DNA of 64,000 nucleotides from Amphiscolops sp. MND2022 (lineage: Eukaryota). The stretch's first letter is position 1, and every line of letters starts with the position of its first letter. The DNA lies in assembly GCA_964187785.1 (NCBI GenBank), contig OZ076418.1:744001-808000 (forward strand), in the 5' to 3' direction. Made by a program: the position numbers and the translations under genes. This document shows positions 31,916 through 53,100 of the stretch, in pieces. The notes under the pieces were generated by a model. That model saw only the letters and a list, made by a program, of their open reading frames with translations, had not been told where the DNA came from and did not search any database.

Positions 31916-32005
31916 ACTTGATCGTCTTGATTGATTTCAGCCGACAGCCATTCCATTGTATATCTCCTCCAGACTAGACACCTAAAATTTCACTCTACTA
32001 TTAAG

Positions 32006-34094: not shown

Positions 34095-34131
34095 ACATTT
34101 TGGAACAGTCTCATTGAACATTTACCCAACA

Positions 34132-34542: not shown

Positions 34543-34623
34543 TTAGCTTCACAGTTTCAAAACCGTGATCGTCCCCTCATTATCCAATTTCAACCACAAA
34601 ATCTAGTTTGCTCAATCACGGAA

Positions 34624-34893
34624 ATGACTGATGGTGTTGATGGTTTGGAAACAATTACACCCCAACAGATTGTATTTGACTCAAACAATCAAGAACGATC
34701 ACCTTGGTTCTTTTTGGGACGCGAATGTTCGAGATCTGCTAGCCTCTTTTTCTTTCAGTGTTTTTTAATTTTCATTTTAGTTTCAACGTCAATCACTTGC
34801 ATTGCATTATCAAAAAGTTGTGAAGAGTCAACTGTTTGGGTTGCAATTTTAACGTGGGCTGTTGGCTATATCTTACCTTCTCCGAGGCCTTAA
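34624..34893 (+). CDS. Small two-helix membrane protein typical of Polintons
   Basis: Hydrophobic segments LFFFQCFLIFILVSTSITCIAL and VWVAILTWAVGYILPSP. Confidence 0.7.
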   Translation: MTDGVDGLETITPQQIVFDSNNQERSPWFFLGRECSRSASLFFFQCFLIFILVSTSITCIALSKSCEESTVWVAILTWAVGYILPSPRP

Positions 34894-34894
34894 C

Positions 34895-35545
34895 ATGAAC
34901 AAAATTAATTCCACGAAAGACAGGCTTTTCATGTCTATAGTAGGCCCTTCTGGGTGTGGAAAGTCCCATTTGATTTTCGACATGTTGAGAAGAACTTTTT
35001 TCCCCGAGTTTGACAAAGTTTTGTATTTTTTCAAACACAGTCAACCTCTATTTGAGCAAATGAGTCGCGAGTTTCCAAAGTTAGAATTCATCGGATCGCT
35101 AGATTTCGATCTAATTGACAATCTACCAGATAATGGAGCCAATTATCTTTTAGTGTTCGATGATTCCTGTCAAGAAATTTACAAATCGCAAAAGTTCATC
35201 GACTTGGCTACTGCAGGAAGACACAAAAAGCTGAGTTGTATTTATATCAAACACAATCTCTTTCACAAATCATCTAACGGTCGGGATATAGACTTGCAAA
35301 ATACACATATTGTTCTTTTCAAATCACCGCGTGACGTACAACAAGTAAAAGTTCTCAGTCGTCAATTAGGAATTGAACGTCAACTAGTAGATTGGTACAT
35401 TGATGCTACTACAAAACCTTTCGGACACTTGATGATTGACCTTAGTCCAAAAACTGATGATCTCATACGTTATGGTACTAATTGTACATCATTTCCTTCA
35501 CAGTTTTACCTACCTAGCAGTAGAGCACGACAGTGGGTTAAATGA
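34895..35545 (+). CDS. FtsK/A32-like genome-packaging ATPase
   Basis: Walker A GPSGCGKS, Walker B LLVFDD and the GRH motif. Confidence 0.93.
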   Translation: MNKINSTKDRLFMSIVGPSGCGKSHLIFDMLRRTFFPEFDKVLYFFKHSQPLFEQMSREFPKLEFIGSLDFDLIDNLPDNGANYLLVFDDSCQEIYKSQKFIDLATAGRHKKLSCIYIKHNLFHKSSNGRDIDLQNTHIVLFKSPRDVQQVKVLSRQLGIERQLVDWYIDATTKPFGHLMIDLSPKTDDLIRYGTNCTSFPSQFYLPSSRARQWVK

Positions 35546-35859
35546 TCAAACCACTGAATTACTTTACTCTGAAACTCTTTTTGACTTTCAACAAAACCCT
35601 CCAAAACATTTTCCTCAAAAAATGTTCCAAAGACTTTCTTCGTTTTCTATGTGAGTGTGTTAAAAATCTACTAGAAGGGAATCTCTGTGATATTCGGCGA
35701 AAGCAAATCAAACGGTTTGAATCTTTAATCATTCGGATAATTTCCCCAAAGACTTCTGTGAGAACAAGACGTGCTTTGCTAGCCAGTGATAAGGGACTCT
35801 CGCTAATCAGATTGATTGGTGGTTGCGTTTTGAAAAAGTTTGCACATAGATTTGATTGA
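35542..35859 (+). CDS. Conserved small basic Polinton protein downstream of the ATPase
   Basis: LRFLCECVKNLLEGN...RRALL pattern; duplicated at 39902-40219. Confidence 0.7.
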   Translation: MIKPLNYFTLKLFLTFNKTLQNIFLKKCSKDFLRFLCECVKNLLEGNLCDIRRKQIKRFESLIIRIISPKTSVRTRRALLASDKGLSLIRLIGGCVLKKFAHRFD

Positions 35860-36376
35860 TGGACAAAAGTAAGTTTGTCTTGATTCCCTTATCTTTGTGG
35901 GAAAATCTATTCAAAAGTTACTTCGAACCCACAACTACAAAAGAAAAATCAGCAGGACAAGTTTATCTCAAATTCGGAGGGTCATTAACCCCGAAGACTG
36001 ATCGTAAGTCGATGGTTTTTGAACCTAAATATAAAGTTAGTAAAGTTGCTCCCCAATCACCTCTGAAATCGTCGCTACCTAATTTCGAAGAAACCTTGGA
36101 GAATAAATACAAGAACAATTCTTCGGCAAAAAAATTCTCAAAAAGCTGACAACGAACGATTCCATCAAGTTTTCAATCAACAAAACTATAATAGTTGACG
36201 ACATTGACACTGAAATTGAAGTGGAGGACTTTATCTCGAACTTGACAAGGAAGAAAGGTGAATTCGATCCACGCTTCACAATAATTTTGAATGTTCTAGA
36301 TCTTGATCCATCTACTGTTCAGAATTCTAAAGCTTTCAATGACGACAATGCAGGATGGGTCTATTACGCTTTCTGA
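35856..36376 (+). pseudogene. Polinton ORF (about 173 aa) with a frameshift in the A7 run at 36128-36134
   Basis: Adding one A continues the frame as KKILKKLTTNDSIKF...AGWVYYAF*; duplicated at 40216-40736 with the same lesion. Confidence 0.65.
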
Positions 36377-37306
36377 AAGATTACTATTGAATAAGTTGTA
36401 CAGAAAAGTTCTTCAGCGTTTGGGTCAATCAAAAGTTTATATAAAAGCAGTGGTCTCACTCGGAAGAAAGTAGAAACATTTCTCGAATCAAAAAGTGCCT
36501 ATACAAAGTTTAAACAGAGACGAGGAAAATTTAATCGACTTTCTGCTCGAGCTAGATTTATCAATGACATTTGGTGCTTGGATTTAGCGCAAATGGATAG
36601 ACTAGCATCTTACAATTCAGGAGTCAAGTATTTAATGGTTGCCGTTGACATCTTTTCACGATTCGTTCGTGTACAACCTCTAAGAACGAAGAGTGCGAAA
36701 AGTACTGAAAATGCATTTGTCAAGATGTGTGGACGTTCCTCAAATGGATTGGATTTCCCCAAAAAACTTTGGATTGATCGAGGTAAAGAATTCCTCGGTG
36801 ACTTTAAAACTTTTTGTGAAGATGTTGGCATTGTCGTTTATCATACAAACAGTGAAACCAAAGCAGCCTACGCGGAAAGAGTTATTCGATCCTTGAAAAA
36901 TGTTATCTATCGTTATCTAGAGGAGAAGAATACTTTCAATTACTTGAAAGAGCTTCCCGCATTCGTTGAAACACTAAATTCACGCGTGTCCTCGGCCACC
37001 AACTTAGCACCTAAGCATGTGATGAACGAACATTTTCTTCAGGTTTTGTATGGTGCCAGAAATTCGTACAACCCTCTCAAAATTGGACAAAGTGAAGCAA
37101 AGTTTTCCGTCTGAGACAGAGTCCGAATCGCAAAAGTTGATAAAGCCTTTCGACGAGGATATAAATCCCAATTCACAGATGAATTGTTCACTATTACTAA
37201 AATTGCTACTCGCTACCCTATTGTTACCTACATAATCAAAAATCAGACTGGAGAAACAATTTTGGGAAAGTTTTACCAATCAGAATTGTCTCGTCAAATC
37301 ACTTGA
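36348..37306 (+). pseudogene. Retrovirus-like DDE integrase (about 319 aa), disrupted by a frameshift near 36408 and an in-frame TGA at 37112-37114
   Basis: DLAQM / WIDRGKEF / AERVIRSLK catalytic motifs. The C-terminal KF.V(G)DRVRI...GY...FT.E.F...GKFY..EL continues past the TGA. Confidence 0.92.
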
Positions 37307-37309
37307 CAG

Positions 37310-38152
37310 ATGGATAACTTTATTGTCGAGTTGGTTTCGAACGCTTCTTCTTCTATTTACCCTGACAATACACTTGCTTCGTTCACCAATTTTCTTCCCG
37401 AACAATTGTACTTAGATGGTGATTGGGAGGTAGCTCTTCTTGAAATCACTTACCCTGCTCTTTATAACAACATTACTGAGGGTAAATTTTGGTACGTACC
37501 ACAGAGAAGTACTTCCAAAAAAAGCAACAACGAAGAAACGAGGGAAGCATCTAATGAATCTTACGAATCTGTGACTATTCTGCCTGGAATGTATTTATCA
37601 TTAGATGAGATTTTTCAGTCGATGAATGATGCACTCAGGTTGCGCAACAGACAAAGTGTCGAACTAAAATGGAAGGTTGATTCAATTACTAGACACTGTG
37701 AAATTGAGTTAGCATCTGACAAGTCACAACTAGTTTTCGCTAGTCAGGACTTATGTTCGATACTGGGTTTTAGTCAGTCAGTATGGTTTAGTAGCAAAGG
37801 TCCTCACAGGAGTGAGTTTCCAATAGATATTCTGCGTTTCCACTCTGTCATGGTATACACTGATATCGTTGAATTTTCAATCATTGGTGATACCAAAGCT
37901 CCAATTCTGAGATGCTTTCCGTTCAATAATAAAATTCAAAGAGATTCTATATCCGTCACAAAGTATTCCAATTATGTTTCGTTCGACAATTTACAATTCA
38001 GAAGACTTTTGAAAAATTCAATACATTCAATCAAAGTTGAACTGAGAAGTCCGACAGGAGAATTAATCCCTTTCGTTGCAGTCGGCATAACACGACTCAC
38101 TTTACTTTTCAGAAAAACGAAAGCTAGTCCCAAAGACTCGATTCCAATCTGA
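37310..38152 (+). CDS. Minor capsid protein (penton-like, single jelly-roll)
   Basis: N-terminal motif LVSNAS..YPDNTLASFTNFLP...L.GDWEVAL.EI.YP. Confidence 0.88.
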   Translation: MDNFIVELVSNASSSIYPDNTLASFTNFLPEQLYLDGDWEVALLEITYPALYNNITEGKFWYVPQRSTSKKSNNEETREASNESYESVTILPGMYLSLDEIFQSMNDALRLRNRQSVELKWKVDSITRHCEIELASDKSQLVFASQDLCSILGFSQSVWFSSKGPHRSEFPIDILRFHSVMVYTDIVEFSIIGDTKAPILRCFPFNNKIQRDSISVTKYSNYVSFDNLQFRRLLKNSIHSIKVELRSPTGELIPFVAVGITRLTLLFRKTKASPKDSIPI

Positions 38153-38154
38153 TC

Positions 38155-38523
38155 ATGAGAAATGTTCATTTACCTCACTTTAGTGGCGTTCCACGTCAAC
38201 GAGGGAGAGGACTCGGAGCACTTGCTGGTACGATTGCTCGTACCGCTTTTCCTATCTTGAAACGCTTTGTTGTACCAGCTTCAAAAAAAATTGGAAGAGA
38301 TGCTATCGATATAGCCTTACCGCAAGTTGAGGATGTCTTCAGCGGAAAATCATCCGTCAAAAAAGCAATCAGGAAAACAGCTTCTTCAACATTAAAAAAA
38401 CAAATTGGAGGAGGTCATCGGAAAAAAATTAGGAGGTCGAAAGGGAAAGCAAAAAGGTTCATTTCTAAACGAAAGAAGAGAAAACGCAGTCGCGAAGATT
38501 TCTTTAAAAAAATTAAAGAGTAA
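38155..38523 (+). CDS. Basic core/cement-like virion protein with QxGxG motifs
   Basis: RQRGRGLG, KQIGGG and an Arg/Lys-rich tail; located between the minor and major capsid genes. Confidence 0.7.
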   Translation: MRNVHLPHFSGVPRQRGRGLGALAGTIARTAFPILKRFVVPASKKIGRDAIDIALPQVEDVFSGKSSVKKAIRKTASSTLKKQIGGGHRKKIRRSKGKAKRFISKRKKRKRSREDFFKKIKE

Positions 38524-39681
38524 TGTCTGTACCCACTCCTGTGAATCACTCCTCATTAGATGTTTTTGATGGAGTTCCAATTTTGGAACCTATTCTTTGG
38601 TCCAACACTCAACAGACTTTCCCTACTAATTCACTGAATGAAGCTAGTATTGATTTCCATCTAGAGACAGATCGTAATGTAATGTTGGACTTACAGGAAA
38701 CTTATTTACTATTGAAAGTTGAAGTGAAAAAGGATGGCGTAGCCTTAGAAAACGCAGATGAAGTCATGTTCAGTAACAATGCGTTACATTCGCTTTTCTC
38801 CAACTGTGAAGTTTACTTCAACAATGAACAAATTTATACTTCTAATGGATTGTATCCTCACAAAGCACAAATTTCAAATGAATTTTCTGGAACTCGAGGT
38901 CTGAAAGATTCTATTGGAATATGTCAAGGGTACCAGTATGAAAATATCCCAAACGACTTTACTTCCGCTCCTTTCACGGGGAAAGTAATGACAGTGAACA
39001 CTGGAGAAAAAAATGTTTTATGGAAAGCTAGCGATCGATGTGTTCACTTGCGACAAATTTCTTCTACCCAACATCAAAGTTAGAATTCGACTCATTCGTT
39101 CACGACCGAATTTTTATCTCATTAGTACCCAAACAAAGAATTTCCATGCTACAATCAAGGAAGCTTCTCTTTTTACTAGAGTAGTTGCAGTGGATGAACC
39201 TTGTATCCGTACTATCCAGGCAACAATCAAGGAGAGACCAGCTCGTTACAACTTTACAGAGGTTCTTAGTAAAACATTCATTATTCCAAACAACCAGAAC
39301 CAGTTTATTCACGAGAACATTTTCAATGCACCAATTAGGCGAATAGCTATCGCAATGAATACAAACACTGCTTTCACTGGAACTTTGGGAACAAACCCTT
39401 TTCACTATAGAAAATTTGATCTTAGAGAAGTGCGAATCGTGAGGGGAAATCAAGTTATTGTCAGGATGGATACAAGAAATATTGTTCAGACTTATGTTAC
39501 CACGATGAAAGCTCTAAAATTTGAGGATGATGGTCCAAACATACCTTTGTCAGAGTATGAGAATCATTTCGTCCAAGTGTTTGATCTGACCTCCACACAA
39601 GAGGCTAATGTCCAAATGTATTATCCTGATGTAGTCGCTGCCAGTCTCAGACTAGAACTTTTCTTCCAGACAGCACTGACT
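38523..39681 (+). pseudogene. Major capsid protein (double jelly-roll), 5' copy: frameshift at A7 (39007-39013) and C-terminus lost at the duplication junction
   Basis: LHSLFSNCEVYFN...YPHKA, GKLAIDVF..DK.L.PN, NPF.Y..F motifs. Confidence 0.9.
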
Positions 39682-40780
39682 AATCACCGCGTGACGTACA
39701 ACAACTAAAAGTTCTCAGTCGTCAATTAGGAATTGAACGTCAACTAGTAGATTGGTACATTGATGCTACTACAAAACCTTTCGGACACTTGATGATTGAC
39801 CTTAGTCCAAAAACTGATGATCTCATACGTTATGGTACTAATTGTACATCATTTCCTTCACAGTTTTACCTACCTAGCAGTAGAGCACGACAGTGGGTTA
39901 AATGATCAAACCACTGAATTACTTTACTCTGAAACTCTTTTTGACTTTCAACAAAACCCTCCAAAACATTTTCCTCAAAAAATGTTCCAAAGACTTTCTT
40001 CGTTTTCTATGTGAGTGTGTTAAAAATCTACTAGAAGGGAATCTCTGTGATATTCGGCGAAAGCAAATCAAACGGTTTGAATCTTTAATCATTCGGATAA
40101 TTTCCCCAAAGACTTCTGTGAGAACAAGACGTGCTTTGCTAGCCAGTGATAAGGGACTCTCGCTAATCAGATTGATTGGTGGTTGCGTTTTGAAAAAGTT
40201 TGCACATAGATTTGATTGATGGACAAAAGTAAGTTTGTCTTGATTCCCTTATCTTTGTGGGAAAATCTATTCAAAAGTTACTTCGAACCCACAACTACAA
40301 AAGAAAAATCAGCAGGACAAGTTTATCTCAAATTCGGAGGGTCATTAACCCCGAAGACTGATCGTAAGTCGATGGTTTTTGAACCTAAATATAAAGTTAG
40401 TAAAGTTGCTCCCCAATCACCTCTGAAATCGTCGCTACCTAATTTCGAAGAAACCTTGGAGAATAAATACAAGAACAATTCTTCGGCAAAAAAATTCTCA
40501 AAAAGCTGACAACGAACGATTCCATCAAGTTTTCAATCAACAAAACTATAATAGTTGACGACATTGACACTGAAATTGAAGTGGAGGACTTTATCTCGAA
40601 CTTGACAAGGAAGAAAGGTGAATTCGATCCACGCTTCACAATAATTTTGAATGTTCTAGATCTTGATCCATCTACTGTTCAGAATTCTAAAGCTTTCAAT
40701 GACGACAATGCAGGATGGGTCTATTACGCTTTCTGAAAGATTACTATTGAATAAGTTGTACAGAAAAGTTCTTCAGCGTT
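39682..40780 (+). repeat. Internal duplication of 35322-36420
   Basis: Constant offset 4360; at least one SNP (ACAAGTAAA versus ACAACTAAA). Confidence 0.95.
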
Positions 40781-40785
40781 AGAAC

Positions 40786-41437
40786 TTATCTCATTAGTAC
40801 CCAAACAAAGAATTTCCATGCTACAATCAAGGAAGCTTCTCTTTTTACTAGAGTAGTTGCAGTGGATGAACCTTGTATCCGTACTATCCAGGCAACAATC
40901 AAGGAGAGACCAGCTCGTTACAACTTTACAGAGGTTCTTAGTAAAACATTCATTATTCCAAACAACCAGAACCAGTTTATTCACGAGAACATTTTCAATG
41001 CACCAATTAGGCGAATAGCTATCGCAATGAATACAAACACTGCTTTCACTGGAACTTTGGGAACAAACCCTTTTCACTATAGAAAATTTGATCTTAGAGA
41101 AGTGCGAATCGTGAGGGGAAATCAAGTTATTGTCAGGATGGATACAAGAAATATTGTTCAGACTTATGTTACCACGATGAAAGCTCTAAAATTTGAGGAT
41201 GATGGTCCAAACATACCTTTGTCAGAGTATGAGAATCATTTCGTCCAAGTGTTTGATCTGACCTCCACACAAGAGGCTAATGTCCAAATGTATTATCCTG
41301 ATGTAGTCGCTGCCAGTCTCAGACTAGAACTTTTCTTCCAGACAGCACTGACTGAAACAATTGAAGTGATTGTCCTCGGTGAACGATTGTCAACAATTTA
41401 TTTAGACAAAAGTGGAACAGTTGTTAAGAATGGATAA
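40786..41437 (+). pseudogene. Major capsid protein, 3' copy (40786-41353 duplicates 39114-39681; carries the only C-terminus)
   Basis: Offset 1672; ends ...LGERLSTIYLDKSGTVVKNG*. Confidence 0.9.
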
Positions 41438-41834
41438 TGAACAACTATTATCTATTGTCTCGAAAATTAAAAACTTGAAGTATAAATATTTGGGATCTTT
41501 TCCCGCAGATATGGTTCCATTTAATATTGACAAAAATAGTTTCTGTATAATTAACAGCGACTCGAGTACTGAACCCGGAACCCATTGGGTGATGATTGCG
41601 GATCGAGACGGAATACTCTACTTTGGTGATTCCTTGGGAAGACCGTTGGACTACTACAGAAAGATACGATTCAATTCGAACCGATCAGTGAAACTCTTGT
41701 GTAATTTTCGGTTGCAAAGACAAGACTTATGTGGACTATACTGTATTTATTTTGCCCATGTACTCTACAAATATGGAAATTTATCGTACGTTTGTGATAG
41801 TTTAATATTACGTTTCTTTGCTGAGTTTTTATAA
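41430..41834 (+). CDS. Adenain-like cysteine protease (134 aa)
   Basis: PGTHW (His), YFGDSLG (Asp) and Q..DLCGLYC (Cys); ATG overlaps the MCP stop. Confidence 0.92.
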   Translation: MDNEQLLSIVSKIKNLKYKYLGSFPADMVPFNIDKNSFCIINSDSSTEPGTHWVMIADRDGILYFGDSLGRPLDYYRKIRFNSNRSVKLLCNFRLQRQDLCGLYCIYFAHVLYKYGNLSYVCDSLILRFFAEFL

Positions 41835-41899
41835 TAAAATTTCACTTAATTTTCTTTCAAGTGACATTTGAGTATTGCGAGTTTTTTGCAAAATAATTC

Positions 41900-43915
41900 C
41901 AAAGATTTCAAAAATTTTCTTCACTATTTCTCGAGTCATGATATTGTTTTTAAATATTTTTTCATGAGGATTCTGAAAAAGTATGGTTTCATAAACTTTT
42001 GAAAAAATCATTATTTTCCTATTTTTTTTTCTACTAAAATCACTAAGAAAATTTCTCTAAACGTATTTTCGTATCTTAGAATTGATTTCTGAGATGTATT
42101 TTTCATGCGGATTCTGAAAATGTATAGTTTTATAGACTCTTGAAAAAACCATTTTTCAATTTTTTTTCATATTTTTTCTCGAATATTTTCAAGAAATTTT
42201 TGTAGAAACGTTTTTTCGAGTTGTATATATGTTTTCTAAGACGTACTTGTTATAAGGATTCTGAAAATGTATGGTTTAATGGACTTTTGAAAAATTTTTT
42301 TTGCTTTTTTCATATTTTTCCTCGAAATTTTTCAAGAAATTTTTGTCGAAACGTTTTTTCGAGTTGTATATATGTTTTCTAAGACGTACTTGTTATAAGG
42401 ATTCTGAAAATGTATGGTTTAATGGACTTTTGAAAAATTTTTTTTTTGATTTTTTTCACATTTTTTCTCGGAATTTTTCAAGAAATTTTTGTCGAAACGT
42501 TTTTTCGAGTTGTATATATGTTTTCTAAGACGTACTTGTTATAAGGATTCTGAAAATGTATGGTTTAATGGACTTTTGAAAAAATTTTTTTTTGTTTTTT
42601 TTTCACATTTTTTCTCGACATTTTTCAAGAAATTTTTGTCGAAACGTTTTTTTGAGTTGTATATATATGTTTTCTAAGACGTACTTATTATAAGGATTCT
42701 GAAAATGTACAGTTTAATGGACTTTTGAAAAAATTTTTTTGATTTTTTCATATTTTTTCTCGAAATTTTTCAAGAAATTTTTGTCGAAACGTTTTTTCGA
42801 GTTGTATATATGTTTTCTAAGACGTACTTGTTATAAGGATTCTGAAAATGTATGGTTTAATGGACTTTTGAAAATTTTTTTTTGATTTTTTTTCACATTT
42901 TTTCTCGAAATTTTTCAAGAAATTTTTGTCGAAACGTTTTTTCGAGTTGTATATATGTTTTCTAAGACGTACTTGTTATAAGGATTCTGAAAATGTATGG
43001 TTTAATCGACTTTTGAAAAAAACTTTTTTTCGATTTTTTTTTCACATTTTTTCTCGAAATTTTTCAAGAAATTTTTGTCGAAACGTTTTTTCGAGTTGTA
43101 AATATGTTTTCTAAGACATACTTGTTATAAGGATTCTGAAAATGTATGGTTTAATGGACTTTTGAAAAAAATTTTTTTTTGTTTTTTTTTCACATTTTTT
43201 CTCGACATTTTTCAAGAAATTTTTGTCGAAATGTTTTTTTGAGTTGTATATATATGTTTTCTAAGACGTACTTATTATAAGGATTCTGAAAATGTATAGT
43301 TTAATGGACTTTTGAAATTTTTTTTCACAATTTTTCTCGAAATTTTTCAAGAAATTTTTGTCGAAACGTTTTTTCGAGTTGTAAATATGTTTTCTAAGAC
43401 GTACTTGTTATAAGGATTCTGAAAATGTATGATTTTATAGACTTTTGAAAAAATCATTTTTTCTTATTCTTTTTCTACTAAAATCACTAAAAATTTTTCT
43501 CTAAACATTTTTTCAACATTTACAATTGATTTCTGAGATGTATTTTTCAGGAGGATTCTGAAAATGTATGATTTTATAGACTTTTGAAAAAATCATTTTT
43601 TCTTAGTCTTTTTCTACTAAAATCACTAAACATTTTTCTCTAAACATTTTTTCAACATTTACAATTGATTTCTGAGATGTATTTTTCAGGAGGATTCTGA
43701 AAATGTATGATTTTATAGACTTTTGAAGAAATCATTTTTTCTTATTCTTTTTCTACTAAAATCACTAAAAATTTTTCTCTAAACATTTTTTCAACATTTA
43801 CAATTGATTTCTGAAATGTTTTTTTTTCATGAGGATTCTGAAAATGTATGGTTTAATGGACTTTTGAAAAAATCATTTTTTCTTATTCTTTTTCTACTAA
43901 AATCACTAAAAATTA
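41900..43915 (+). repeat. AT-rich tandem array, about 14 units of ~133-150 bp, inside the Polinton
   Basis: GGATTCTGAAAA recurs at about 41968, 42109, 42256, 42399, 42545, 42694, 42837, 42982, 43131, 43281, 43414, 43553, 43692 and 43833. Confidence 0.95.
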
Positions 43916-43994
43916 ATAAATTCGAAATAGTAAACCAATGCAATTGACAAAATTGAAAGCAATAACATTTCAACTTCAATCTCTCGCACAGGGT

Positions 43995-44010
43995 AGCCCT
44001 TAAAAGGGCT
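43995..44010 (-). terminator. Histone-type 3' stem-loop after the RING-like gene
   Basis: Minus strand AACCC-AGCCCT-TTTA-AGGGCT-ACCCT, 23 nt after the stop codon. Confidence 0.65.
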
Positions 44011-44033
44011 GGGTTGAAAAGAAAGTTGACTTA

Positions 44034-44300
44034 CTAGTCGCTCGATGACATGATGACATCGTCCTCTGACTCCTGTTGGATGTTCAGAGAGGTAGAGCGA
44101 CAGTGTGGACATTTGTCTATGTACTGAGAGCAGACAGCTCTACAGAAGACAAAGTCACACACTCCGCAACTAACCCACGAGCACCAACATTTCCTCCGAA
44201 GTGTAAGACAGATGGCACACCTCTCCTTAGTGCCTCTGTGTTCATGGATTCCGAACTCCGCTCCGACTTTTTCACGACTAGTTAACTTTCTCTTAGGCAT
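44034..44300 (-). CDS. Cys-rich RING/FYVE-like zinc-finger protein (88 aa)
   Basis: C-x2-C-x6-C-x-C-x4-C-x2-C-x4-C-x3-C-x6-C-x2-C ending CPHCR; N-terminal PKRK; homologs in the flanking array. Confidence 0.75.
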   Translation of the reverse strand: MPKRKLTSREKVGAEFGIHEHRGTKERCAICLTLRRKCWCSWVSCGVCDFVFCRAVCSQYIDKCPHCRSTSLNIQQESEDDVIMSSSD

Positions 44301-44683
44301 GATTGCAGAATAAAATGATATTGTTCAGACTAAAGAGAGAATCTATAACTCTCCTTTGATTGGTTACAATGAACTGAGTGACTCTACATTGGTTAAGTAC
44401 ATTCTTGTGATTTCTGACCAATAATATCACAGCGCAAAAAACTGATATATAATTAACATTAAACAAAGATCAAAAGAAACCAGATCAGACCCTTAAGATT
44501 AAAGAGAATGAAAATCTCTTTAACCTCAAAGAAAATCTCAGGTGAACCTTACGAGGTCTGGGATTCGAAGAAAAAGAAATAACTAACCTGTAGTTGGCGT
44601 TCCACAAAGTTCAAAGGAAACCGGATCAGAACCTTAAGTTTAAAGAGAAAGTCAATCTTTAAACTCAAAGAAAAATCACTGGT

Positions 44684-44699
44684 AGCCCTTAAAAGGGCT
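44684..44699 (-). terminator. Histone-type 3' stem-loop after the PIP-box ORF
   Basis: Minus strand AACCC-AGCCCT-TTTA-AGGGCT-ACCAG, 22 nt after the stop codon. Confidence 0.65.
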
Positions 44700-44721
44700 G
44701 GGTTTGAAAAGACTAAACAAG

Positions 44722-44931
44722 TTACTTGTAAAAGTCTGTAATTTTACTTTGCTTCGGAAGCTTCCCAACGAAGTTCTTCAGCGTGACGACACTATGCTCA
44801 GCCGGGACGATCAACCAGATCGCCCGGTCTCCATTCTCTCCGTTCACTTCTTCGGCTTGCCTCACCGTAAGGTGGGGTAGCCCATTCTCCCTGGCCCGAC
44901 GGAGCAAAATCTCTCGCCTGCTTTCTAACAT
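44722..44931 (-). CDS. Micro-protein (69 aa) with C-terminal PCNA-interacting PIP box QSKITDFY
   Basis: ATG at 44931; matches the Q-x-x-(ILM)-x-x-(FY)-(FY) consensus at the extreme C-terminus; followed by the stem-loop. Confidence 0.6.
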   Translation of the reverse strand: MLESRREILLRRARENGLPHLTVRQAEEVNGENGDRAIWLIVPAEHSVVTLKNFVGKLPKQSKITDFYK

Positions 44932-45174
44932 CCTCACAAAAATTCGGTATTTTAAGTAACTTGTTTGTGACTACAAAAATTGAGGTATGATGGTAAGGTT
45001 TCAAAATTGGAAAAGTTGGTAGAAATTGATCTTGACGGAATATGATTGGATGAAATTGCTAGATCCTATTTTAAAAATCCTGATAAAGATGATTTTTTGC
45101 CTTGACAGCATGTCTGGTTGAGTTAGTAAATTTATTAATGTTGAAAAGGAAACCTTGAAGTGATAATTATTTTT

Positions 45175-45410
45175 TCTGACGGGTAGTCTACTTTACTGAA
45201 CTAGTTAATAGTCCTTGAATAGAAATCCACTAACAGATAATTACTCTTGCTGACGGGTAGTCTACTTTACTGAACTAGTTAATGTTCGTTGAATAGAAAT
45301 CCACTAACACATAATTACTTTCGCCGACGGGTAGTCTACTTTACTGAACTAGTTAATAGTCCTTGAATAGAAATTCACTAACACATAATTACTTTCGCCG
45401 ACGGGTAGTC
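45175..45410 (-). repeat. Subterminal ~74-bp tandem repeats sharing the CTACCCGTC..AAGTAATTAT core
   Basis: Three full units plus the copy inside the TIR. Confidence 0.8.
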
Positions 45411-45655
45411 TGATAAGATTGACAGGTTCTTTTGTTTGAGGAGATAATTAGTTCATATAGTAGTCGGATGACCTTCACAGGTTATTTGACTCAAATAAGA
45501 CAGTTCTCGGGTGAATGAACTCCTAGCTGGCTGATAAAATTGGCAGGTTCTTAATTTGAGGAGATAAATTTCTAAAGGATATTGAAGCGGAACACGAAAA
45601 AAGGTAAATGAACTCCTCACTTTATACCTGCCACATTGGAACATATACTACTACT
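45385..45655 (-). repeat. Right terminal inverted repeat
   Basis: Reverse complement of 25545-25813. Confidence 0.95.
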
Positions 45656-47158
45656 GCTAGGTTTTTGAGGATTTAAAAATTACTGAAAGGGGTCAAAAGC
45701 TGTCCTTCCCTGCTATGCGGGCATGAAATTAACATTGTTCCACACACTTTGGCGCAGCAAGCTTTACCACAAGTGGTGCATTGCAACCAGTCGCACCAGC
45801 ATGCTGAATTCAGAGTAGTACATACCCAACAGTAAGTGTGTTTTTTCTGCATACAGTCATGACGTCAGGGTGAATGGTTAGAATTCGGACTTCCTTCGTC
45901 TCAACGTGGAAGTACGTGAATAGTTCCCTGGTTTCGAATTCTGAGTTAGCATTGTATAAACAAGCATAATTGTTGGAAGCACTGTAAATTAATATTAATT
46001 TCATTTAAAAGCTTCCCATGACTTTGAAATGAGTATAAAACTGGTTTATAGCCTCAATTCGCATCAGGGTAGCCTTTAAAAAGGCTAGGTTTTTGAGGAT
46101 TTAAAAATTACTGGAGGGGGTAAAAAGCTGTCCTCCCCTGCAATGTGGGCATGAAAATAACCTTGCTCCACACACTTTGGCGCAGCAAACTTTACCACAA
46201 GTGGTGATTGCAACTAGTCGCACCAGCATGCTGAATTCAGAGTAGTACATACCGAACAGTAAGTGTGCTTATTCTGCATACAGTCATGACGTGTTCCAAA
46301 TTTGTTCCACGTTTGTTGGAAGCAATATTTTTGCACGTCATAGAAATATTCAGTTTCAATGCAACAAAAGCTCATCTTTTGCCAAGGAGGAGAAACTTTC
46401 TCGACACTTTCTGGCTAAACACTCAACGTCTAGTTTCGTATGCTCTATCTGTATATTACCGTCTCTTACTTTCAACCGTTTGAGTTATCATAAACGTCAA
46501 GAACACGGAAGAGTGGGGAAAATACCAATCGATCAAATTGATTTATCTGGATTTGGAGAGGAGAATCTAGTAAACTGTGAAAGAGATCATTCAATAAAAT
46601 AATTATCGAAGAATATAAAATAATATTAATTTCATTTAAAAGCTTCCCATGACTTTGAAATGAGTATAAAACTGGTTTATAGCCTCAATTCGCATCAGGG
46701 TAGCCTTTAAAAAGGCTAGGTTTGTGAGGATTTAAAAATTATTGAAGGGGGTCAAAAGCTGTCCTTCCCTGCTATGTGGGCATGAAATTAACAATGTTCC
46801 ACACACTTTGGCGCATCAAACTTTACACAAGTGGTGCATTGCAACCAGTCGCACCAGCATGCTGAATTCAGAGTAGTACATACCCAACAGTAAGTGTGTT
46901 TATTCTGCATACAGTCATGACGTCAGGGTGAATGGCTAGAAATCGGACTTCCTTCGTCTCAACGTGGAGGTACCTGAATAGTTCCCTGGTTTCGAATTCT
47001 GAGTTACCATTGTATAAACAAGCATAATTGTTGGAAGCACTATAAATTAATATTAATTTCATTTAAAAGCTTCCCATGACTTTGAAATGAGTTTAAAACT
47101 GGTTTATAGCCTCAATTTGCATCAGGGTAGCCTTTAAAAAGGCTAGGTTTTTGAGGAT

Positions 47159-47350
47159 TTAAAAATTATTGAAGGGGGTAAAAAGCTGTCCTTCCCTGCA
47201 ATGTGGGCCTGAAATTAACATTGCTCCACACACTTTGGCGCAGCAAACTTTACCAAAAGTGGTGCATTGCAACCAGTCGCACCTGCATGCTGAATTCAGA
47301 GTAGTACATACCCAACAGTAGGTGTGCTTATTCTGTATACAGTCATGACG
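47159..47350 (-). pseudogene. Older-family RING/FYVE-like gene fragment (one of six copies, at about 45672, 46101, 46732, 47159, 48928 and 52390)
   Basis: YCWVCTTLNSAC(W/R)CDWLQCTT(C/F)GKVCCAKVCG..LI.CPH.R aligns with RCAICLTLRRKCWCSWVSCGVCDFVFCRAVCSQYIDKCPHCR. Confidence 0.85.
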
Positions 47351-49574
47351 TGTTCCAAGTTTGTTCCAAGTTTGTTGGAAGCAATATTTTTGCACGTCAT
47401 AGAAAGATTCAGTTTCAATGCAACAAAAGCTCCCCATCTTTTGACAAGGAGGAGAAACTTTCTCGACACTTTCTGGCTAAACACTCAACGTCTAGTTTCG
47501 TATGCTCTATCTGTAAATTACCGTCTCTTACTTTCAACCGTTTCAGTTGTCATAAATGTCAAGTACATGGAAGAGTGGGAAAAGTACCAATCGATCAAAT
47601 TGATTTGTCTGAATTTGGAGAGGAGAATCCAGAATTATTGGAGGAACATCGTTCTGGGCAGCCTTTCTGGGTTGATTCCATGAACAATTTTTGTTTCGTG
47701 TTTTTCGATAATTTTTCAGTAGAAAACCGTTTTGACCAAATAAAATATCATTTTTCTCAATTGTAGACCGGTTTTCATGAATTTTGACTGTTTTCCGATA
47801 GCTTTTTATCGGAAAATGGCCATTTTTCTAATTTGAAACTCATTTTTGGTACTTATTTCCAGGAAAGAAAAGGGAGAACTCGTCGTTTTCGCGAATTTGA
47901 GTACATTGAGTTGATGTCTCTGATGTTGGAAGCGCGGGGCCCACCCCCTTTATATACATGGGGGTGTATCCCCGCTGTCGGTGTGATATGAGTGGCCTAT
48001 AGCTGTAACGATCAAGACTCATTCCGAAACGTCACGATAACACACCCTTAGTGCTATATGTTAACATATACTCAATAAAACTTACTTAATCCTTAAAATA
48101 TTGAATGAGATGAAAGCGATCTGGCAGAATTAATCTGATTCTTGAAAAATCCAAGTTTTCGGTTCTTACCTACATGTCCTTGTTCACTTAGAAGTGTTAT
48201 GCTCAGTACTTGTTCCCACTAGACGGTACTGATAGTTTTTCTAAATCGATGAATCTTCACTTACTTAAAAACTGGTTTGATTATATTATACTAAACTTCT
48301 GGCGGAACGAACAACTTTCAATACTAAACTAATTCTAGTTGAGTTAGTTTCCCGTATTTTGCTCCAGGTTGCAAAATTCAGCGAAAACTTGTACTGGATT
48401 AAGTGAGTCATGAAACCTTGGGAAGCCTCCTTTACTGGACTACTGGAAGTAACATATCATCGAACACTTGTGACGGATTGAGTGAACCAAAAACAAATTG
48501 ATTGCAGAGACACTTCTAACTTTCAACTTACAGTATACAGTAGTAAACTTACTGTAGTAATCCGCGAAAGAGAATATTCATGAAAGGTATGAAAAGTGAA
48601 TAAACCTTCGAGTCACAGTGAACATGACAGGTTAGAAATATCGATTCTCTAAACTGTCTTGTAAACCGTGCAGATCATTCATGAGTGATATGAAATGAAA
48701 AGTGAATGAACTTTTGACTCGCAGTGAACATGACAGGTTAGACTTACTGAATCACAACTGTCTAAAAAAACCGTGGAAGAGATCATTCATTAAAATAACT
48801 ATCGAAGAATATAAATTAATATTAATTTCATTTAAAAGCTTCCCATGACTTCGAAATGAGTATAAAACTGGTTTATAGCCTCAATTCGCATCAGGGTAGC
48901 CTTTAAAAAGGCTGGGTTTTTGAGGATTTAAAAATTATTGAAGGGGGTCCAAAAGCTGTCCTTCCCTGCAATGTGGGCATGAAATTAACATTGTTCCACA
49001 CACTTTGGCGCCGCAAACTTTACCACAAGTGGTGCATTGCAACCAATCGCACCAGCCTGCTGAATTGAGAGTAGTGCATACCCAACAGTAAGTGTGCTTA
49101 TTCTGCATACAGTCATGACGTCAGGGTTAATGGTTAGAATTCGGACTTCTTTCGTCTCAACGTGGAAGTACGTGAATAGTTCCCTCGTTTCGAATTCTGA
49201 GTTAGCATTGTATAAACAAGCATAACTGTTGGAAGTTGATGATTTGTGAAGAAGATAGAGATTGAACTGAGAAAATGAAGATTATTGAAGAAATTTTGGA
49301 ACAGTTGTGGAGCAAAGTTTAGAATTACGAAGTTATTTCAAAATTATAGTATCTGAAGGTAATTGTGTGAGAAAACTTGGAGGTTAAAGTTTGGACTTTT
49401 CGAAACTGAGTAACAGAGCAAAATTTGGATGACGTGTGAAAATGAAGATTTGTGAAGAAGTTTAAGGTTGAATTTCGGAGCAGTTGGAGATGGAATTTCG
49501 AAGCAGTGTTGCTGAGGAAAAGTTTCCGAACGTCAGTATTTGTACTATCCATTCTTTGAATAAATGATGAATAA

Positions 49575-50170: not shown

Positions 50171-53100
50171 ACATCCATGAAAGGTACCCAAATTCAAGCT
50201 TTTACAAAATTAGGAATGAATTTGGCATTCCGTGGTAGTCTGGATCTGTTTCCTGCTTTGTTCGTAAAATATAGTAACATTTCGTTCCTTCTCTTAGTCT
50301 CTGATTATCCTATTGACCTCACACAATTTCGAACAATACTCAGTATCAATTCAAATTTTTGTAATTCTCCCAATTGTCAGTATCATATTCTAGTTTACAG
50401 CACACATCTCAGTTCTTCAGATTTTTCACTCCAGGGCATTTTCTCCTATCAGATTGTAGGCTGTCTTTTCACTGTCTTTATTTCATAAAGTTTTATTTCA
50501 TAAACATACTAAAATTGAAAGGATTCATTTTCCGAGAACTTTTGTCAGCAATCGACTTCCATTAATCTCTCCGGTCTCCAGTCCCAACAAGTTTCAATGT
50601 GTCGAGAAAAGACTTCTTCAGAAGAAATTCAAAACTAATCCGAGAAAATAAACATTGATTTCTCCCAAAGCTCTCGAAACTTGCACTATTGCAATTCTCT
50701 CCAAAAGAAATTCGATATTGTTATCCAGCAAACGAGAAGAATTACTTGAAACTATAGATTGTATATCAAAATTTTTATAGCTTCTCAAAATGTCTCATAG
50801 AGAACTGAAACAATGTCCCATGTGTTCCAAGTTTGTTGGAAGCAATAACTTTGTACGTCATAAAAAGATTTAGTTTCAATGCAGCAAAAGCTCCTCATCT
50901 TTTGCCAAAGAGGAGAAACTTTCTCGATACTTTCTGGCTAAACACTCCACGTCTAGTTTCGTATGCTCTATCTGTAAATTAGCGTCTCTTACTTTCAACT
51001 GTTTGAGTTATCATAAACGTCGAGTACATGGAAGAGTGGGAAAAATACCAATAGATCAAATTGATTTATCTTAATTTGGAGATGAGAATCCAGAATTATT
51101 GGAGGAACTTCGTTCTGGGCAACCTTTCTGGGTTGATTCCATGAACAACTTTTGTTTCGTGTTTTTCGAAAATTTTTCAATAGAAAACCGTTTCGACCAA
51201 ATAAAATATCCTTTTTCTCAATTGTAGACCGGTTTTCAAGAATTTTGACTGTTTTCCGATAGCTTTTTATTGGAAAATGGCCATTTTTCTAATTTGAAAC
51301 TCAATTTTGGTACTCGTTTTCAGGAAAGAAAAGGGAGAACCCGTCGTTTTCGCTAATTTGAGTACATTGAGTTGATGTCTATGATGTTGGGAGCGCGGGG
51401 CCCACCCTCTTCATATACATGGGGGTGTATCCCCGCGGTCGGTGTGATATGACTAGCCTATAGCTGTAGCGATCAAGGCTCATTCCGAGACGTCACGATA
51501 ACACACCCTTAGTGCTATATGTTAACATATACTCAATAAAACTTAATCTTTAAAATGATATTGAATGAAATAAAAGCGATCTGACAGATTTAATCTGATT
51601 CTTGACAAATCCAAGTTTTCGGTTCTTTCCTACATGTCCTTGTTCACTCAGAAGTGTTATGCTCAGTACTTGTTCCCACTAGACGTTACTGACAGTTTTT
51701 CTAAATCGATGAATCTTCACTTACTTAAAAACTGGTTTGATTATATTATACTAAACTTCTGGCGGTACGAACAACTTTCAATACTGAACTAATTCTAGTT
51801 GAGTGAGTTTCCCGTATTTTGCTACAGGTTGCAAAATTCAGCGAAAACTTGCACTGGATTAAGTGAGTCATGAAACCTTGGGAAGCCTCCGTTACTGGAC
51901 TACTGAAAGTAACAGGTCAGCGAAAACTTGTGACGGATTGAGTGAACCAAAAACAAATTGATTTTAAGAGCCACTACTAACTTTCAACTAACAGTATACG
52001 GTAGTTAACTTACTGTAGTAATCCGCGAAAGAGAATATTCATGAAAGGTATGAAAAGTGAATAAACCTTCGAGTCACAGTGAACAAGACAGGTTAGAAAT
52101 ATCGATTCTCTAAACTGTCTTGTAAACCGTGCAGATCATTCATGAGTGATATGAAATGAAAAGTGAATGAACTTTTGACTCGCAGTGAACATGACAGGTT
52201 AGACTTACTGATTCACTAAACTGTCTAGTAGACTGTGAAAGAGATCATTCATAAAAATAATTATCGATGAATATAAATTAATATTAATTTCATTTAAAAG
52301 CTTCCCATGACATTGAAATGAGTATAAAACTGGTTTATAGCCTAAATTCGCATCAGGGTAGCCTTTAAAAAGGCTGGGTTTTTGAGGATTCAAAAATTAT
52401 TGAAGGGGGTCCAAAAGCTGTCCTTCCCTGCAATGTGGGCATGAAATTAACATTGTTCGACACACTTTGGCGCAGCAAACTTTACCACAAGTGATGCATT
52501 GCAACCTGTCGCACCAGCATGCTGAATTCAGAGTAGTACATACCCAACAGTAAGTGTGCTTATTCTGCATACAGTCATGACCTCATGGTGAATAGTTAGA
52601 ATTCGGACTTCCTTCGTCTTAACGTGGAAGTACGTGAATAGTTCCCTGGTTTCGAATTCTGAGATTGCATCGTATAAACGAGCATAATTGTTGGAAGTTG
52701 ATTTGTGGAGAAGATAGAGATTGAACTGAGAAAATGAAGATATTGAAGAAATTTTGGAACAGAGTTGTGGAGCAAAGTTTAGAATTACGAAGTTATTTCA
52801 AAATTATAGTATCTGAAGCTAATTGTGTGAGAAAACTCGGAGGTTAAAGATTCGACTTTTCGAAGCTGAGTAACAGAGCATTGGAGGAACTTCGTTCTGG
52901 GCAACCTTTCTGGGTTGATTCCATGAACAACTTTTGTTTCGTGTTTTTTGATAATTTTTTGATAGAAAACTGTTTTGACCAAATAAAATATCATTTATCT
53001 CAATTGTAGACCGGTTTTCATGAATTTTGACTTTTCCGATAGTTTTTTTATTGGAAAATGGCCATTTCTCTAATTTGAAACTCATTTTTGATACTCGTTT

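What the first reader, a model, noticed from the sequence alone, without database searches (positions are those of the whole stretch)
43990..44724. Polinton genes ending in replication-dependent-histone-type 3' stem-loops
Seen: both minus-strand right-arm ORFs (RING-like 44034-44300; PIP-box 44722-44931) are followed 23 and 22 nt after their stop codons by the identical sequence AACCC-AGCCCT-TTTA-AGGGCT-ACC. A degenerate third copy lies at 44544-44559. Established: metazoan replication-dependent histone mRNAs end a short distance after the stop codon in a 6-bp stem/4-nt loop (about CCAAA-GGCYCT-TTTC-AGRGCC-ACCCA). It is bound by SLBP and cleaved about 5 nt downstream with U7 snRNP. The second stem G, loop U1/U3, the top U-A pair and the ACC tail are all retained here; the bottom pair is A-U rather than G-C and the 5' flank is less A-rich. 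A TTGA(G/A) motif recurs about 14-19 nt downstream as a candidate downstream element. Inference: this virus-like element may plug early genes into the host histone-mRNA pathway to get non-polyadenylated, S-phase-restricted expression. I know of no description of this for Polintons, but have not checked the literature.
Basis: partly seen in the sequence, partly recalled or inferred. Interest (0 to 1): 0.92.

Follow-up and report, generated by a model that had tools for sequence, protein, structure and literature searches.

The report
Histone-type 3' hairpins on Polinton genes
Two small non-histone genes of a virus-like transposon (Polinton) in an unidentified animal end in the same RNA hairpin that closes genuine histone genes. 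This hints that the element ties their expression to the host's DNA-replication phase, but no RNA evidence exists yet.

Summary
Two minus-strand genes in the right arm of a 20.1-kb Polinton (25545-45655) are followed, 22 and 23 nt after their stops, by an identical 6-bp/4-nt-loop hairpin.

A generic histone-hairpin definition finds 8 sites in the window against 0.12 expected. All are on the minus strand and all belong to one family.

The other six lie in remnants of a second Polinton family (B) into which this element inserted. Three full-length-looking B copies and a contig from another metagenome (family C) carry a homologous Cys-rich gene with the hairpin.

The proteins are only 36-39% identical, yet the 30-nt hairpin block is 80-90% identical. 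Its only stem change is a compensatory C-G to U-A.

The same 19-mer ends six genuine histone H1 genes in metagenomes.

Against membership: Rfam Histone3 scores are subthreshold (18.5-20.5 against 34), though one real H1 hairpin scores 20.3. The two 5'-flanking adenines are displaced, and no convincing downstream element was found.

Host histone genes, U7 and transcripts could not be reached.

Verdict: probably a co-opted histone-type 3' end signal. Conservation is shown; function is inferred. I found no prior description.

The parts
25545..45655 (.). Polinton 'family A' copy, 20,111 bp, with termini AGTAGTAG.../...CTACTACT. It is degraded: 7 of 14 reference genes are interrupted.
   Evidence: TIRs, junction alignment, Pfam hits, break counts against sibling L068.
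25539..25544 (.). Left copy of the 6-bp target-site duplication (CCTAGC on the minus strand).
45656..45661 (.). Right copy of the 6-bp target-site duplication.
25545..25818 (.). Left terminal inverted repeat.
   Evidence: 94-97% complementary to the right arm.
45380..45655 (.). Right terminal inverted repeat.
44722..44931 (-). 69-aa ORF ending in QSKITDFYK, a canonical PIP box with the TD motif. Found in family A only.
   Evidence: consensus from PMC3973308. 98.6% identical in 4 sibling copies.
44681..44704 (-). Stem-loop 1 with flanks (stem 44699-44684), 22 nt after the PIP-ORF stop.
   Evidence: Histone3 19.8 bits; -10.5 kcal/mol, z = -3.0.
44544..44559 (-). Decayed duplicate of the stem-loop inside a ~140-nt tandem duplication, with no ORF upstream.
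   Evidence: z = -0.6.
44034..44300 (-). 88-aa Cys-rich ORF with paired CxxC motifs and an acidic tail. Probably zinc-binding; the fold is unassigned.
   Evidence: no Pfam hit; pLDDT 46.
43992..44015 (-). Stem-loop 2 with flanks (stem 44010-43995), 23 nt after the Cys-rich ORF stop.
   Evidence: 19.4 bits; -9.1 kcal/mol, z = -2.1.
41957..43966 (.). Array of ~140-146-bp tandem repeats between the protease gene and stem-loop 2.
   Evidence: families D1, D2, D8, D9.
26616..30954 (-). Protein-primed family-B DNA polymerase gene. Interrupted: 2 pieces in 2 frames.
34931..35651 (+). A32-like packaging ATPase gene (interrupted).
36339..37303 (+). rve integrase gene. Interrupted: 3 pieces in 3 frames, 1 in-frame stop.
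38523..41434 (+). Conserved 414-aa ORF next to the protease. Called capsid-like by position only. Interrupted once by an internal duplicated segment.
41430..41834 (+). Adenain-like cysteine protease gene. The ORF is intact; the Pfam match is weak.
   Evidence: (Peptidase_C5, E = 0.0039, below cut-off).
21455..25387 (+). Remnant of a second Polinton (family B), colinear at 87% identity with L072 10201-14173. It forms the left flank of element A.
25523..25541 (-). Family-B-type stem-loop (AGCCTT.TTTA.AAGGCT + ACC). The insertion of element A cut it off from its ORF.
45673..45852 (-). Cys-rich paralogue (59 aa) whose stem-loop was split off by the insertion of element A.
46068..46250 (-). Fragmentary Cys-rich paralogue plus stem-loop (stem 46086-46071), gap 14 nt.
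   Evidence: (18.5 bits).
46699..46910 (-). Fragmentary Cys-rich paralogue plus stem-loop (stem 46717-46702).
47126..47437 (-). Cys-rich paralogue (92-aa ORF) plus stem-loop (stem 47144-47129), gap 14 nt.
   Evidence: (20.5 bits).
48895..49108 (-). Cys-rich paralogue (57 aa) plus stem-loop (stem 48913-48898), gap 21 nt.
   Evidence: (20.4 bits).
52357..52570 (-). Cys-rich paralogue (57 aa) plus stem-loop (stem 52375-52360), gap 21 nt.
   Evidence: (20.4 bits).

Best explanation
The hairpin is a portable, histone-type 3'-end signal that Polintons of this animal lineage attach to small accessory genes.

Proposed mechanism:
1. Each gene is a short, intronless unit read inward from the right terminus.
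2. The transcript folds into a 6-bp/4-nt-loop hairpin 14-23 nt after the stop codon.
3. The host stem-loop binding protein recognises it through G-C at stem position 2, U at loop positions 1 and 3, and the 3' ACC.
4. The histone cleavage machinery cuts a few bases after the stem, leaving a non-polyadenylated mRNA.
5. The amount and lifetime of that mRNA follow SLBP, and therefore S phase.

The products fit that timing. One is a 69-aa protein ending in a high-affinity-type PCNA-binding motif. The other is a Cys-rich, probably zinc-binding protein of the 'Oncoid'-like accessory class. Both would act while the host replicates and the element's own polymerase could copy it.

Shown here: the hairpin's presence, position, modularity (two unrelated ORFs carry it), conservation with a compensatory change, and identity to genuine H1 hairpins.

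Inferred: every RNA-processing and timing step, and both protein functions.
For: - Abundance: 8 generic histone-hairpin sites against 0.12 expected, all on the coding strand of one gene family.
- Specificity: Rfam Histone3 is the only family hit repeatedly, 7 times at 18.5-20.5 bits.
- Published diagnostic features are all present (criteria): G-C at position 2, U at loop position 3, closeness to the stop codon.
- The identical 19-mer AGCCCTTTTAAGGGCTACC ends six Pfam-verified H1 genes 31-43 nt after their stops. These score 20.3-36.4 bits, so the low Rfam score reflects the flanks, not the hairpin.
- Conservation across families: A (5 of 7 copies), B (3 of 3 copies plus 6 remnant units) and C (L059).
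- Protein identity is 36-39%, while the 30-nt hairpin block is 24-27/30 identical.
- Pairing is 100%, with one compensatory pair (C-G 6, U-A 5) and no half-changed intermediates.
- Two unrelated ORFs in family A carry the same ~31-nt block.
- A duplicate of the block with no gene upstream has decayed.
- No other gene of the element has a comparable hairpin.
- The PIP motif with TD matches the published signature.
Against: - There is no transcript or 3'-end evidence of any kind.
- Rfam scores are below the gathering threshold of 34.
- The two adenines immediately 5' of the stem, part of the minimal high-affinity SLBP site (mutant), are replaced by CC(C/U). The AA pair sits 3 nt further upstream.
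- Downstream purine content is not above background, and the TTGAR motif lies at variable distance, 8-22 nt. A U7-pairing element is therefore unproven.
- The host's own histone hairpins, SLBP and U7 were not found in ~415 kb of held host DNA.
- Family C copies L074 and L076 and family D copy L073 lack the cassette.
- Copies within a family are too similar to show selection.
Confidence: 0.55

Rival explanations
1. The hairpin is a conserved RNA element that works without SLBP or U7. Examples would be a generic stability or termination hairpin, or a binding site for an element-encoded protein. Its likeness to the histone hairpin would then be convergent or vestigial.
For: - The canonical 5' adenines are displaced, and the flank AACC(C/U) is itself conserved across families A, B and C. 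That suggests a somewhat different recognition surface.
- No convincing purine-rich downstream element was found.
- Rfam scores are subthreshold.
Against: - The 16-nt core plus ACC is letter-identical to hairpins of genuine H1 genes. Every published diagnostic position is kept.
- Convergence on 19 of 19 bases is unlikely.
- Only 1-2 accessory genes per element carry it. There is no element-wide hairpin rule.
Confidence: 0.2
2. The 16-bp palindrome acts at the DNA level. It could be a protein-binding or cruciform site, a recombination hotspot that moves the cassette between Polinton families, or an integration target.
For: - Element A inserted exactly into one such hairpin, with the target-site duplication CCTAGC overlapping the stem.
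- The cassette is present or absent between near-identical family C copies.
- The cassette abuts different family B segments in the rearranged units.
- A compensatory C-G to U-A change preserves the palindrome on both strands.
Against: - Six other insertions of family A have unrelated flanks, so there is no target preference.
- The loop (TTTA) and both flanks are asymmetric. They are conserved in one orientation, at a fixed 14-23 nt from a stop codon.
- A copy without a gene upstream has decayed.
Confidence: 0.08
3. The hairpin has no function. It would be a fragment of a host histone 3' UTR, or a chance palindrome, captured once with the Cys-rich gene and carried along passively.
For: - Copies within each family are 90-100% identical, so they say nothing about selection.
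- All occurrences trace to one gene cassette lineage plus one intra-element duplication.
Against: - Between families the coding sequence has diverged to 36-39% amino-acid identity, while the hairpin block stays 80-90% identical and its only stem change is compensatory.
- The block was re-used on a second, unrelated ORF.
- The one gene-less duplicate has degenerated.
Confidence: 0.07

Closest known systems
[quoted passage not shown]
   Same: - 6-bp stem and 4-nt loop.
- G-C at stem position 2 and a U-A closing pair.
- U at loop positions 1 and 3, and a 3' ACC(C).
- Sits 14-23 nt after a stop codon of a short intronless gene.
- Core plus tail is identical to the hairpin of six genuine H1 genes.
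   Different: - The upstream genes are not histones but accessory genes of a virus-like transposon.
- The bottom pair is A-U.
- The 5' flank is AACC(C/U) instead of adenines next to the stem.
- No clear purine-rich downstream element.
- Rfam score is 18.5-20.5 against a gathering score of 34.
- Processing was not demonstrated.
'Oncoid' accessory genes of adintoviruses/Polintons (Starrett et al. 2021, PMC8502044)
   Same: Small ORFs near an end of the element with paired CxxC (potential zinc-binding) motifs and an acidic CK2-like site. They are proposed to act on the host cell cycle.
   Different: - The 88-aa protein has no LxCxE motif.
- No sequence homologue was found in protein databases.
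- That paper does not mention stem-loops or polyadenylation (0 occurrences each).
Hairpin-defined mRNA 3' ends of giant viruses (the Mimivirus 'hairpin rule'; recalled from my own knowledge, not fetched)
   Same: A palindrome shortly after the stop codon of a gene in a related viral realm marks the transcript end.
   Different: - There the rule covers most genes, the hairpins vary in sequence, and transcripts are polyadenylated.
- Here only two of about 22 ORFs carry a hairpin, and its sequence is invariant and histone-like. The other genes show nothing comparable.
U7-snRNA-dependent repression of HERV1/LTR12 elements in human cells (PMC11417402, listed; abstract only)
   Same: Sequences of a mobile element engage a component of the histone 3'-end machinery.
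   Different: Going by the abstract, that case involves sequence motifs in the LTR12 elements and leads to repression. Here a complete SLBP-type stem-loop follows protein-coding genes.

Membership tests
Histone 3' stem-loop (RF00032) | 6-bp stem with a 4-nt loop | tested here: met
   100% of 66 cells paired; MFE -7.9 to -10.5 kcal/mol.
Histone 3' stem-loop (RF00032) | G-C pair at stem position 2 (the base read by SLBP) | tested here: met
   Invariant in all copies. Criterion.
Histone 3' stem-loop (RF00032) | U at loop positions 1 and 3 | tested here: met
   The loop is TTTA in all window copies. One sibling copy (L067) has TATA, which keeps positions 1 and 3.
Histone 3' stem-loop (RF00032) | 3' flank beginning with A (ACC/ACCC) | tested here: met
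Histone 3' stem-loop (RF00032) | Two adenines directly 5' of the stem (part of the minimal high-affinity SLBP site) | tested here: not met
   The flank is AACC(C/U), so the adenines lie 3 nt further upstream. Criterion from PMC10388802 and PMC3884669.
Histone 3' stem-loop (RF00032) | Located a short distance (median ~30 nt) after the stop codon | tested here: met
   Gaps of 14, 21, 22 and 23 nt. Criterion.
Histone 3' stem-loop (RF00032) | Rfam gathering score (34 bits) | tested here: not met
   18.5-20.5 bits. However, five of six genuine H1 hairpins with the same core also fall below 34 (20.3-33.6 bits).
Histone 3' stem-loop (RF00032) | Purine-rich downstream element complementary to the host U7 snRNA | tested here: inconclusive
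   Purine content is at background level. TTGAR recurs but at variable distance. The host U7 is not available.
Histone 3' stem-loop (RF00032) | The upstream gene is a replication-dependent histone | tested here: not met
   The ORFs have no histone fold or Pfam hit.
Histone 3' stem-loop (RF00032) | SLBP binding, cleavage 4-5 nt after the stem, no poly(A) tail | not testable with these tools
   No transcript data could be reached. The exact ORFs are absent from the protein/contig collection.
Polinton/Maverick | Protein-primed family-B DNA polymerase | tested here: met
   PF03175, E = 4e-14.
Polinton/Maverick | Retroviral-type (rve) integrase | tested here: met
   PF00665, E = 1e-8 in the window and 5e-11 in a sibling copy.
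Polinton/Maverick | A32/FtsK-type packaging ATPase and adenain-like protease | tested here: met
   Pox_A32, E = 3e-7. The protease match is weak: Peptidase_C5, E = 0.0039, below the cut-off.
Polinton/Maverick | Long terminal inverted repeats and a 6-bp target-site duplication | tested here: met
   ~275-bp TIRs. The CCTAGC duplication and an empty-site-like sequence in paralogous units.
Polinton/Maverick | Jelly-roll capsid proteins | not tested
   The 414-aa conserved ORF has no Pfam hit. It is called capsid-like by position only.
PIP-box PCNA-interacting proteins | Q-x-x-(M/L/V/I)-x-x-(F/Y)-(F/Y); the TD motif marks high-affinity binders | tested here: met
   The C-terminal QSKITDFY matches the signature in PMC3973308. 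The +4 basic residue of a PIP degron is absent because the protein ends at +1. PCNA binding itself was not tested.
RING finger | Match to RING/zinc-finger profiles or fold | tested here: not met
   No Pfam hit at E <= 0.1. AlphaFold pLDDT 46 gave no usable model.
Element-wide hairpin rule for 3' ends (giant-virus type) | Most genes are followed by a stable hairpin | tested here: not met
   Only the two right-arm genes have a G+C-rich 6-bp hairpin. The other 20 ORFs show unrelated weak stems.

The most novel reading that the evidence does not exclude
Mobile elements of several classes may have captured the complete histone-mRNA 3'-end signal, producing the first known non-histone mRNAs that end in the histone stem-loop.

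The classes seen here are Polintons of at least three families, RT-encoding retroelements, and GDSL-esterase ORFs of the kind carried by some LINEs. The last two appear in metagenome contigs L002, L033, L035, L019, L023 and L027.

The consequence would be that these elements couple their expression to host S phase through SLBP. In the Polinton this would deliver a PCNA-binding peptide exactly when replication forks are available.
Probability: 0.4. Interest if true: 0.92.

Novelty: new variant of a known kind. Interest (0 to 1): 0.8.

Why it matters
Replication-dependent histone mRNAs are described as the only metazoan mRNAs that end in a stem-loop instead of poly(A) (PMC10388802).

A virus-like transposon that places this signal on its own accessory genes would be the first parasite known to tap the pathway. 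That would provide:
- a simple explanation of how an integrated DNA element times gene expression to host DNA replication;
- a natural set of variant hairpins (A-U base pair, shifted adenines) that probe what SLBP tolerates;
- a sequence tag for finding cell-cycle-coupled accessory genes in Polintons, adintoviruses and other repeats.

The pairing with a PCNA-binding motif makes the S-phase idea directly testable by expression profiling.

Tried and rejected
- **Cys-rich protein, word-based homologue search:** no hit.
- **Cys-rich paralogues, profile search of 1.8 billion representatives:** one hit, a bacterial invasin-like repeat protein. Rejected as compositional.
- **IMG/VR scans:** the hairpin pattern and the Cys-rich profile both found nothing.
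- **AlphaFold model of the 88-aa protein:** pLDDT 46, so no fold search was run.
- **PDB search with the PIP-box protein:** a single hit to the DC-SIGNR neck repeats, made of seven weak stretches summed. Rejected as spurious.
- **Poly(A)-signal census after every gene of the element:** uninformative, because almost no gene has AATAAA or ATTAAA nearby.
- **Purine-rich downstream element:** not above background.
- **Integration-target idea:** rejected, because six other insertions have unrelated flanks.
- **Element-wide hairpin rule:** rejected.
- **Host histone genes and U7:** none in the window or in ~415 kb of fetched host contigs. The tools offered no way to search that assembly by DNA.
- **Host identity:** unresolved. 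The tropomodulin-like gene is at most ~35% identical to any named animal protein.
- **Related Polintons L071/L074/L076 (family C) and L073 (family D):** no Histone3-like hit.
- **Literature:** no paper combines Polinton or Maverick with the histone stem-loop or SLBP, and none links the stem-loop to transposons in the relevant sense.
Full report
**1. The observation**

Read on the minus strand, the window carries the block AACCC-AGCCCT-TTTA-AGGGCT-ACC twice.
- One stem is at 44699-44684, 22 nt after the TAA of ORF 44722-44931.
- The other is at 44010-43995, 23 nt after the TAG of ORF 44034-44300.

Both fold as isolated 6-bp/4-nt hairpins (-10.5 and -9.1 kcal/mol, z = -3.0 and -2.1).

The degenerate copy at 44559-44544 is real but folds no better than shuffles (z = -0.6). 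It lies in a ~140-nt tandem duplication of the sequence after hairpin 1 and has no gene upstream.

The 16-mer with up to 3 mismatches gives 10 matches against 0.42 expected. I also used a generic definition taken from the literature rather than from this sequence: a 6-bp stem, G-C at position 2, U at loop positions 1 and 3, then AC. It gives 8 sites against 0.12 in shuffles. All are on the minus strand and all belong to one family.

**2. Context**

The host element is a Polinton. It has a pPolB (PF03175, E = 4e-14), an A32-like ATPase, an rve integrase and a weak adenain-like protease.

Its exact bounds are 25545-45655 (20,111 bp). It has ~275-bp terminal inverted repeats, AG...CT termini and a 6-bp target-site duplication, CCTAGC.

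This copy is degraded. Against a sibling copy, 7 of 14 reference genes are interrupted:
- pPolB, one unnamed ORF and the integrase by frame changes;
- another unnamed ORF by a frame change and three in-frame stops;
- the integrase also by one in-frame stop;
- the ATPase and a neighbouring ORF by frame changes, with part of them present twice;
- the capsid-like ORF by one internal duplicated segment.

The two hairpin genes are intact.

The contig comes from ENA assembly ERZ25074608. The host is an animal that I could not name. Its tropomodulin-like gene is at most ~35% identical to named proteins.

**3. The flanks are another Polinton**

The six further hairpins carry the variant AGCCTT-TTTA-AAGGCT and start at 25526, 46071, 46702, 47129, 48898 and 52360. 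They follow paralogues of the Cys-rich ORF at 14 or 21 nt where the ORF is intact.

This DNA is not unique host sequence. Window 21455-25387 is colinear at 87% identity with a second Polinton family, B. The units to the right of element A are rearranged pieces of B.

Element A inserted into one B-type hairpin, and the duplicated CCTAGC overlaps the stem. Six other A insertions have unrelated flanks, so this is not a target preference.

**4. Distribution**

| Family | Source | Finding |
|---|---|---|
| A | Same assembly | Both hairpin genes in 5 of 7 copies. Two copies lack that part of the right arm. One copy has an insertion that separates the Cys-rich ORF from its hairpin. |
| B | Same assembly | Three copies with a full-length 1410-aa, or split, pPolB. 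Each has one Cys-rich ORF plus hairpin 21 nt after the stop, on the minus strand in the right arm. |
| C | JGI metagenome contig L059 | A homologous Cys-rich ORF (shared EFGIHEH motif) with the hairpin 23 nt after its stop. |
| C | Assembly ERZ26859043 (L074, L076) | Flanks of L059 are 92% identical to this family, but these two copies lack the cassette. |
| D | L073 | No hairpin within 10 kb either side of its capsid-like gene. |

**5. Conservation**

Between families the Cys-rich proteins are 36-39% identical, while the 30-nt hairpin block is 24-27/30 identical. The B and C copies share 25 of 25 bases around the stem.

An 11-sequence alignment included three H1 hairpins. All 66 stem cells pair, five pairs never vary, and one pair is C-G in six sequences and U-A in five, with no half-changed state.

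Within family A the same ~31-nt block follows two unrelated ORFs. This is the behaviour of a modular signal.

**6. Is it histone-type?**

Rfam Histone3 is the only family hit repeatedly in the region, seven times at 18.5-20.5 bits against a gathering score of 34.

Published diagnostic features are G-C at stem position 2, U at loop position 3, a median distance of ~30 nt from the stop, and a purine-rich downstream region (preprint 10.64898/2026.10.14.759114). All but the last are met.

The strongest evidence comes from a scan of metagenome contigs for AGCCYTTTTAARGGCTACC, which returned 60 loci. Six are genuine linker-histone genes (Pfam Linker_histone, E ~1e-28 to 1e-29) that end 31-43 nt after the stop in exactly the family A 19-mer.

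Those hairpins score 32.7-36.4 bits, except one at 20.3. So an A-U bottom pair is used by real histone genes, and a score near 20 does not exclude a real member.

**7. What does not fit**

- The minimal high-affinity SLBP site includes two adenines directly 5' of the stem (PMC10388802). A mutant changed in these adenines and in the second base pair does not bind SLBP (PMC3884669). Here the flank is AACC(C/U), conserved in families A, B and C.
- Downstream purine content equals background. TTGAR occurs in all four lineages but 8-22 nt from the stem.
- Poly(A) signals are uninformative.
- No host histone gene or U7 lies in the ~415 kb of host DNA that I could fetch.

**8. The proteins**

The 69-aa ORF ends in QSKITDFYK. 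This matches the canonical PIP box and carries the TD motif associated with high-affinity PCNA binding. It lacks the +4 basic residue of a PIP degron (PMC3973308).

The 88-aa ORF has paired CxxC motifs and an acidic tail. It recalls the 'Oncoid' accessory genes of adintoviruses (PMC8502044) but has no LxCxE motif. It has no Pfam hit and no confident model. 'RING-like' is therefore unsupported.

**9. Explanation and rivals**

| Explanation | Confidence |
|---|---|
| A co-opted histone-type 3'-end signal giving SLBP-dependent, S-phase-linked expression of accessory genes | 0.55 |
| An SLBP-independent RNA hairpin | 0.20 |
| A DNA-level palindrome | 0.08 |
| Passive carry-over with no function | 0.07 |

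An element-wide hairpin rule is excluded.

**10. Novelty**

Full-text searches found no paper that links Polintons or Mavericks with the histone stem-loop or SLBP. None links the stem-loop to transposons in the relevant sense either.

Many other loci from the pattern scan show the same hairpin 21-52 nt after non-histone ORFs, followed by a purine run such as CCAAAAAGAG. These ORFs include GDSL-esterase ORFs and the last ORF of RT-encoding elements. The phenomenon may therefore be wider than this Polinton.

**11. Limits and a slip**

All evidence is sequence-based.

From these, the position of an insertion in a sibling copy and of internal duplications can be inferred. That goes beyond the rule to count breaks without placing them. 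I have not repeated those places here, and I have deleted nothing.

Noticed in passing
window 21455-25544 and 45656-~54900: Element A is nested in remnants of a second Polinton family (B). The right-hand flank is a rearranged, partly tandem set of B pieces with periods of ~1.06 and ~3.46 kb, each carrying a Cys-rich ORF plus hairpin.
   Followed up: yes
L002, L003, L012, L018, L025, L029, L034, L053, L057 (JAAUYA contigs); L033, L035, L058: The same hairpin sits 28-50 nt after non-histone ORFs. In most of these loci a purine run such as CCAAAAAGAG follows. In L002, L033 and L035 an RT-domain ORF lies upstream on the same strand. This looks like retroelements using a histone-type 3' signal.
   Followed up: partly
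L019, L023, L027, L048, L060, and about 10 related short contigs (Ga0058701, Ga0268247): GDSL-lipase/esterase ORFs, as in ORF1 of some LINEs, are followed 21-45 nt later by the hairpin. It is a repeated family within one sample set.
   Followed up: partly
L020 1001-1119; L031 190-308, 2278-2396, 2537-2655: 5S rRNA genes (117 bits) are interleaved with histone H1 genes on the same contigs.
   Followed up: no
L059 against L074 17100-17620 and L076: The Cys-rich gene plus hairpin cassette (~800 nt) is present in L059. It is replaced by ~200 nt of unrelated sequence in two otherwise 92%-identical family C copies, so the cassette is gained or lost as a unit.
   Followed up: partly
window 41957-43966: About 14 tandem repeats of 140-146 bp lie between the protease gene and the Cys-rich gene's hairpin. 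Family B has a comparable array of short repeats after its pPolB (L075 11701-13875).
   Followed up: no
within window 25545-45655: Two pairs of 100%-identical direct repeats of at least 300 nt lie inside element A. They reflect either a very recent internal duplication or an assembly artefact. One consequence is the interruption of the capsid-like ORF.
   Followed up: partly
window 6179-7705 (+): A single 508-aa ORF encodes a tropomodulin/leiomodin-like protein (Pfam Tropomodulin plus LRR_TMOD-LMOD). It is at most ~35% identical to named animal proteins. A 70%-identical relative exists in another ENA sample. The host lineage appears unsampled.
   Followed up: partly
window 44325-44400 (-): CCAAT-like (AACCAATCA) and TATA-like (TTATAGA) motifs lie about 65 and 45 nt upstream of the Cys-rich ORF start. 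This was read by eye only.
   Followed up: no
L063 16009-19119; L065 17920-19776: The flanks of other family A copies carry a non-LTR retrotransposon (Exo_endo_phos plus RVT_1) and a hAT transposase (DUF659 plus Dimer_Tnp_hAT). The host genome is repeat-rich.
   Followed up: no
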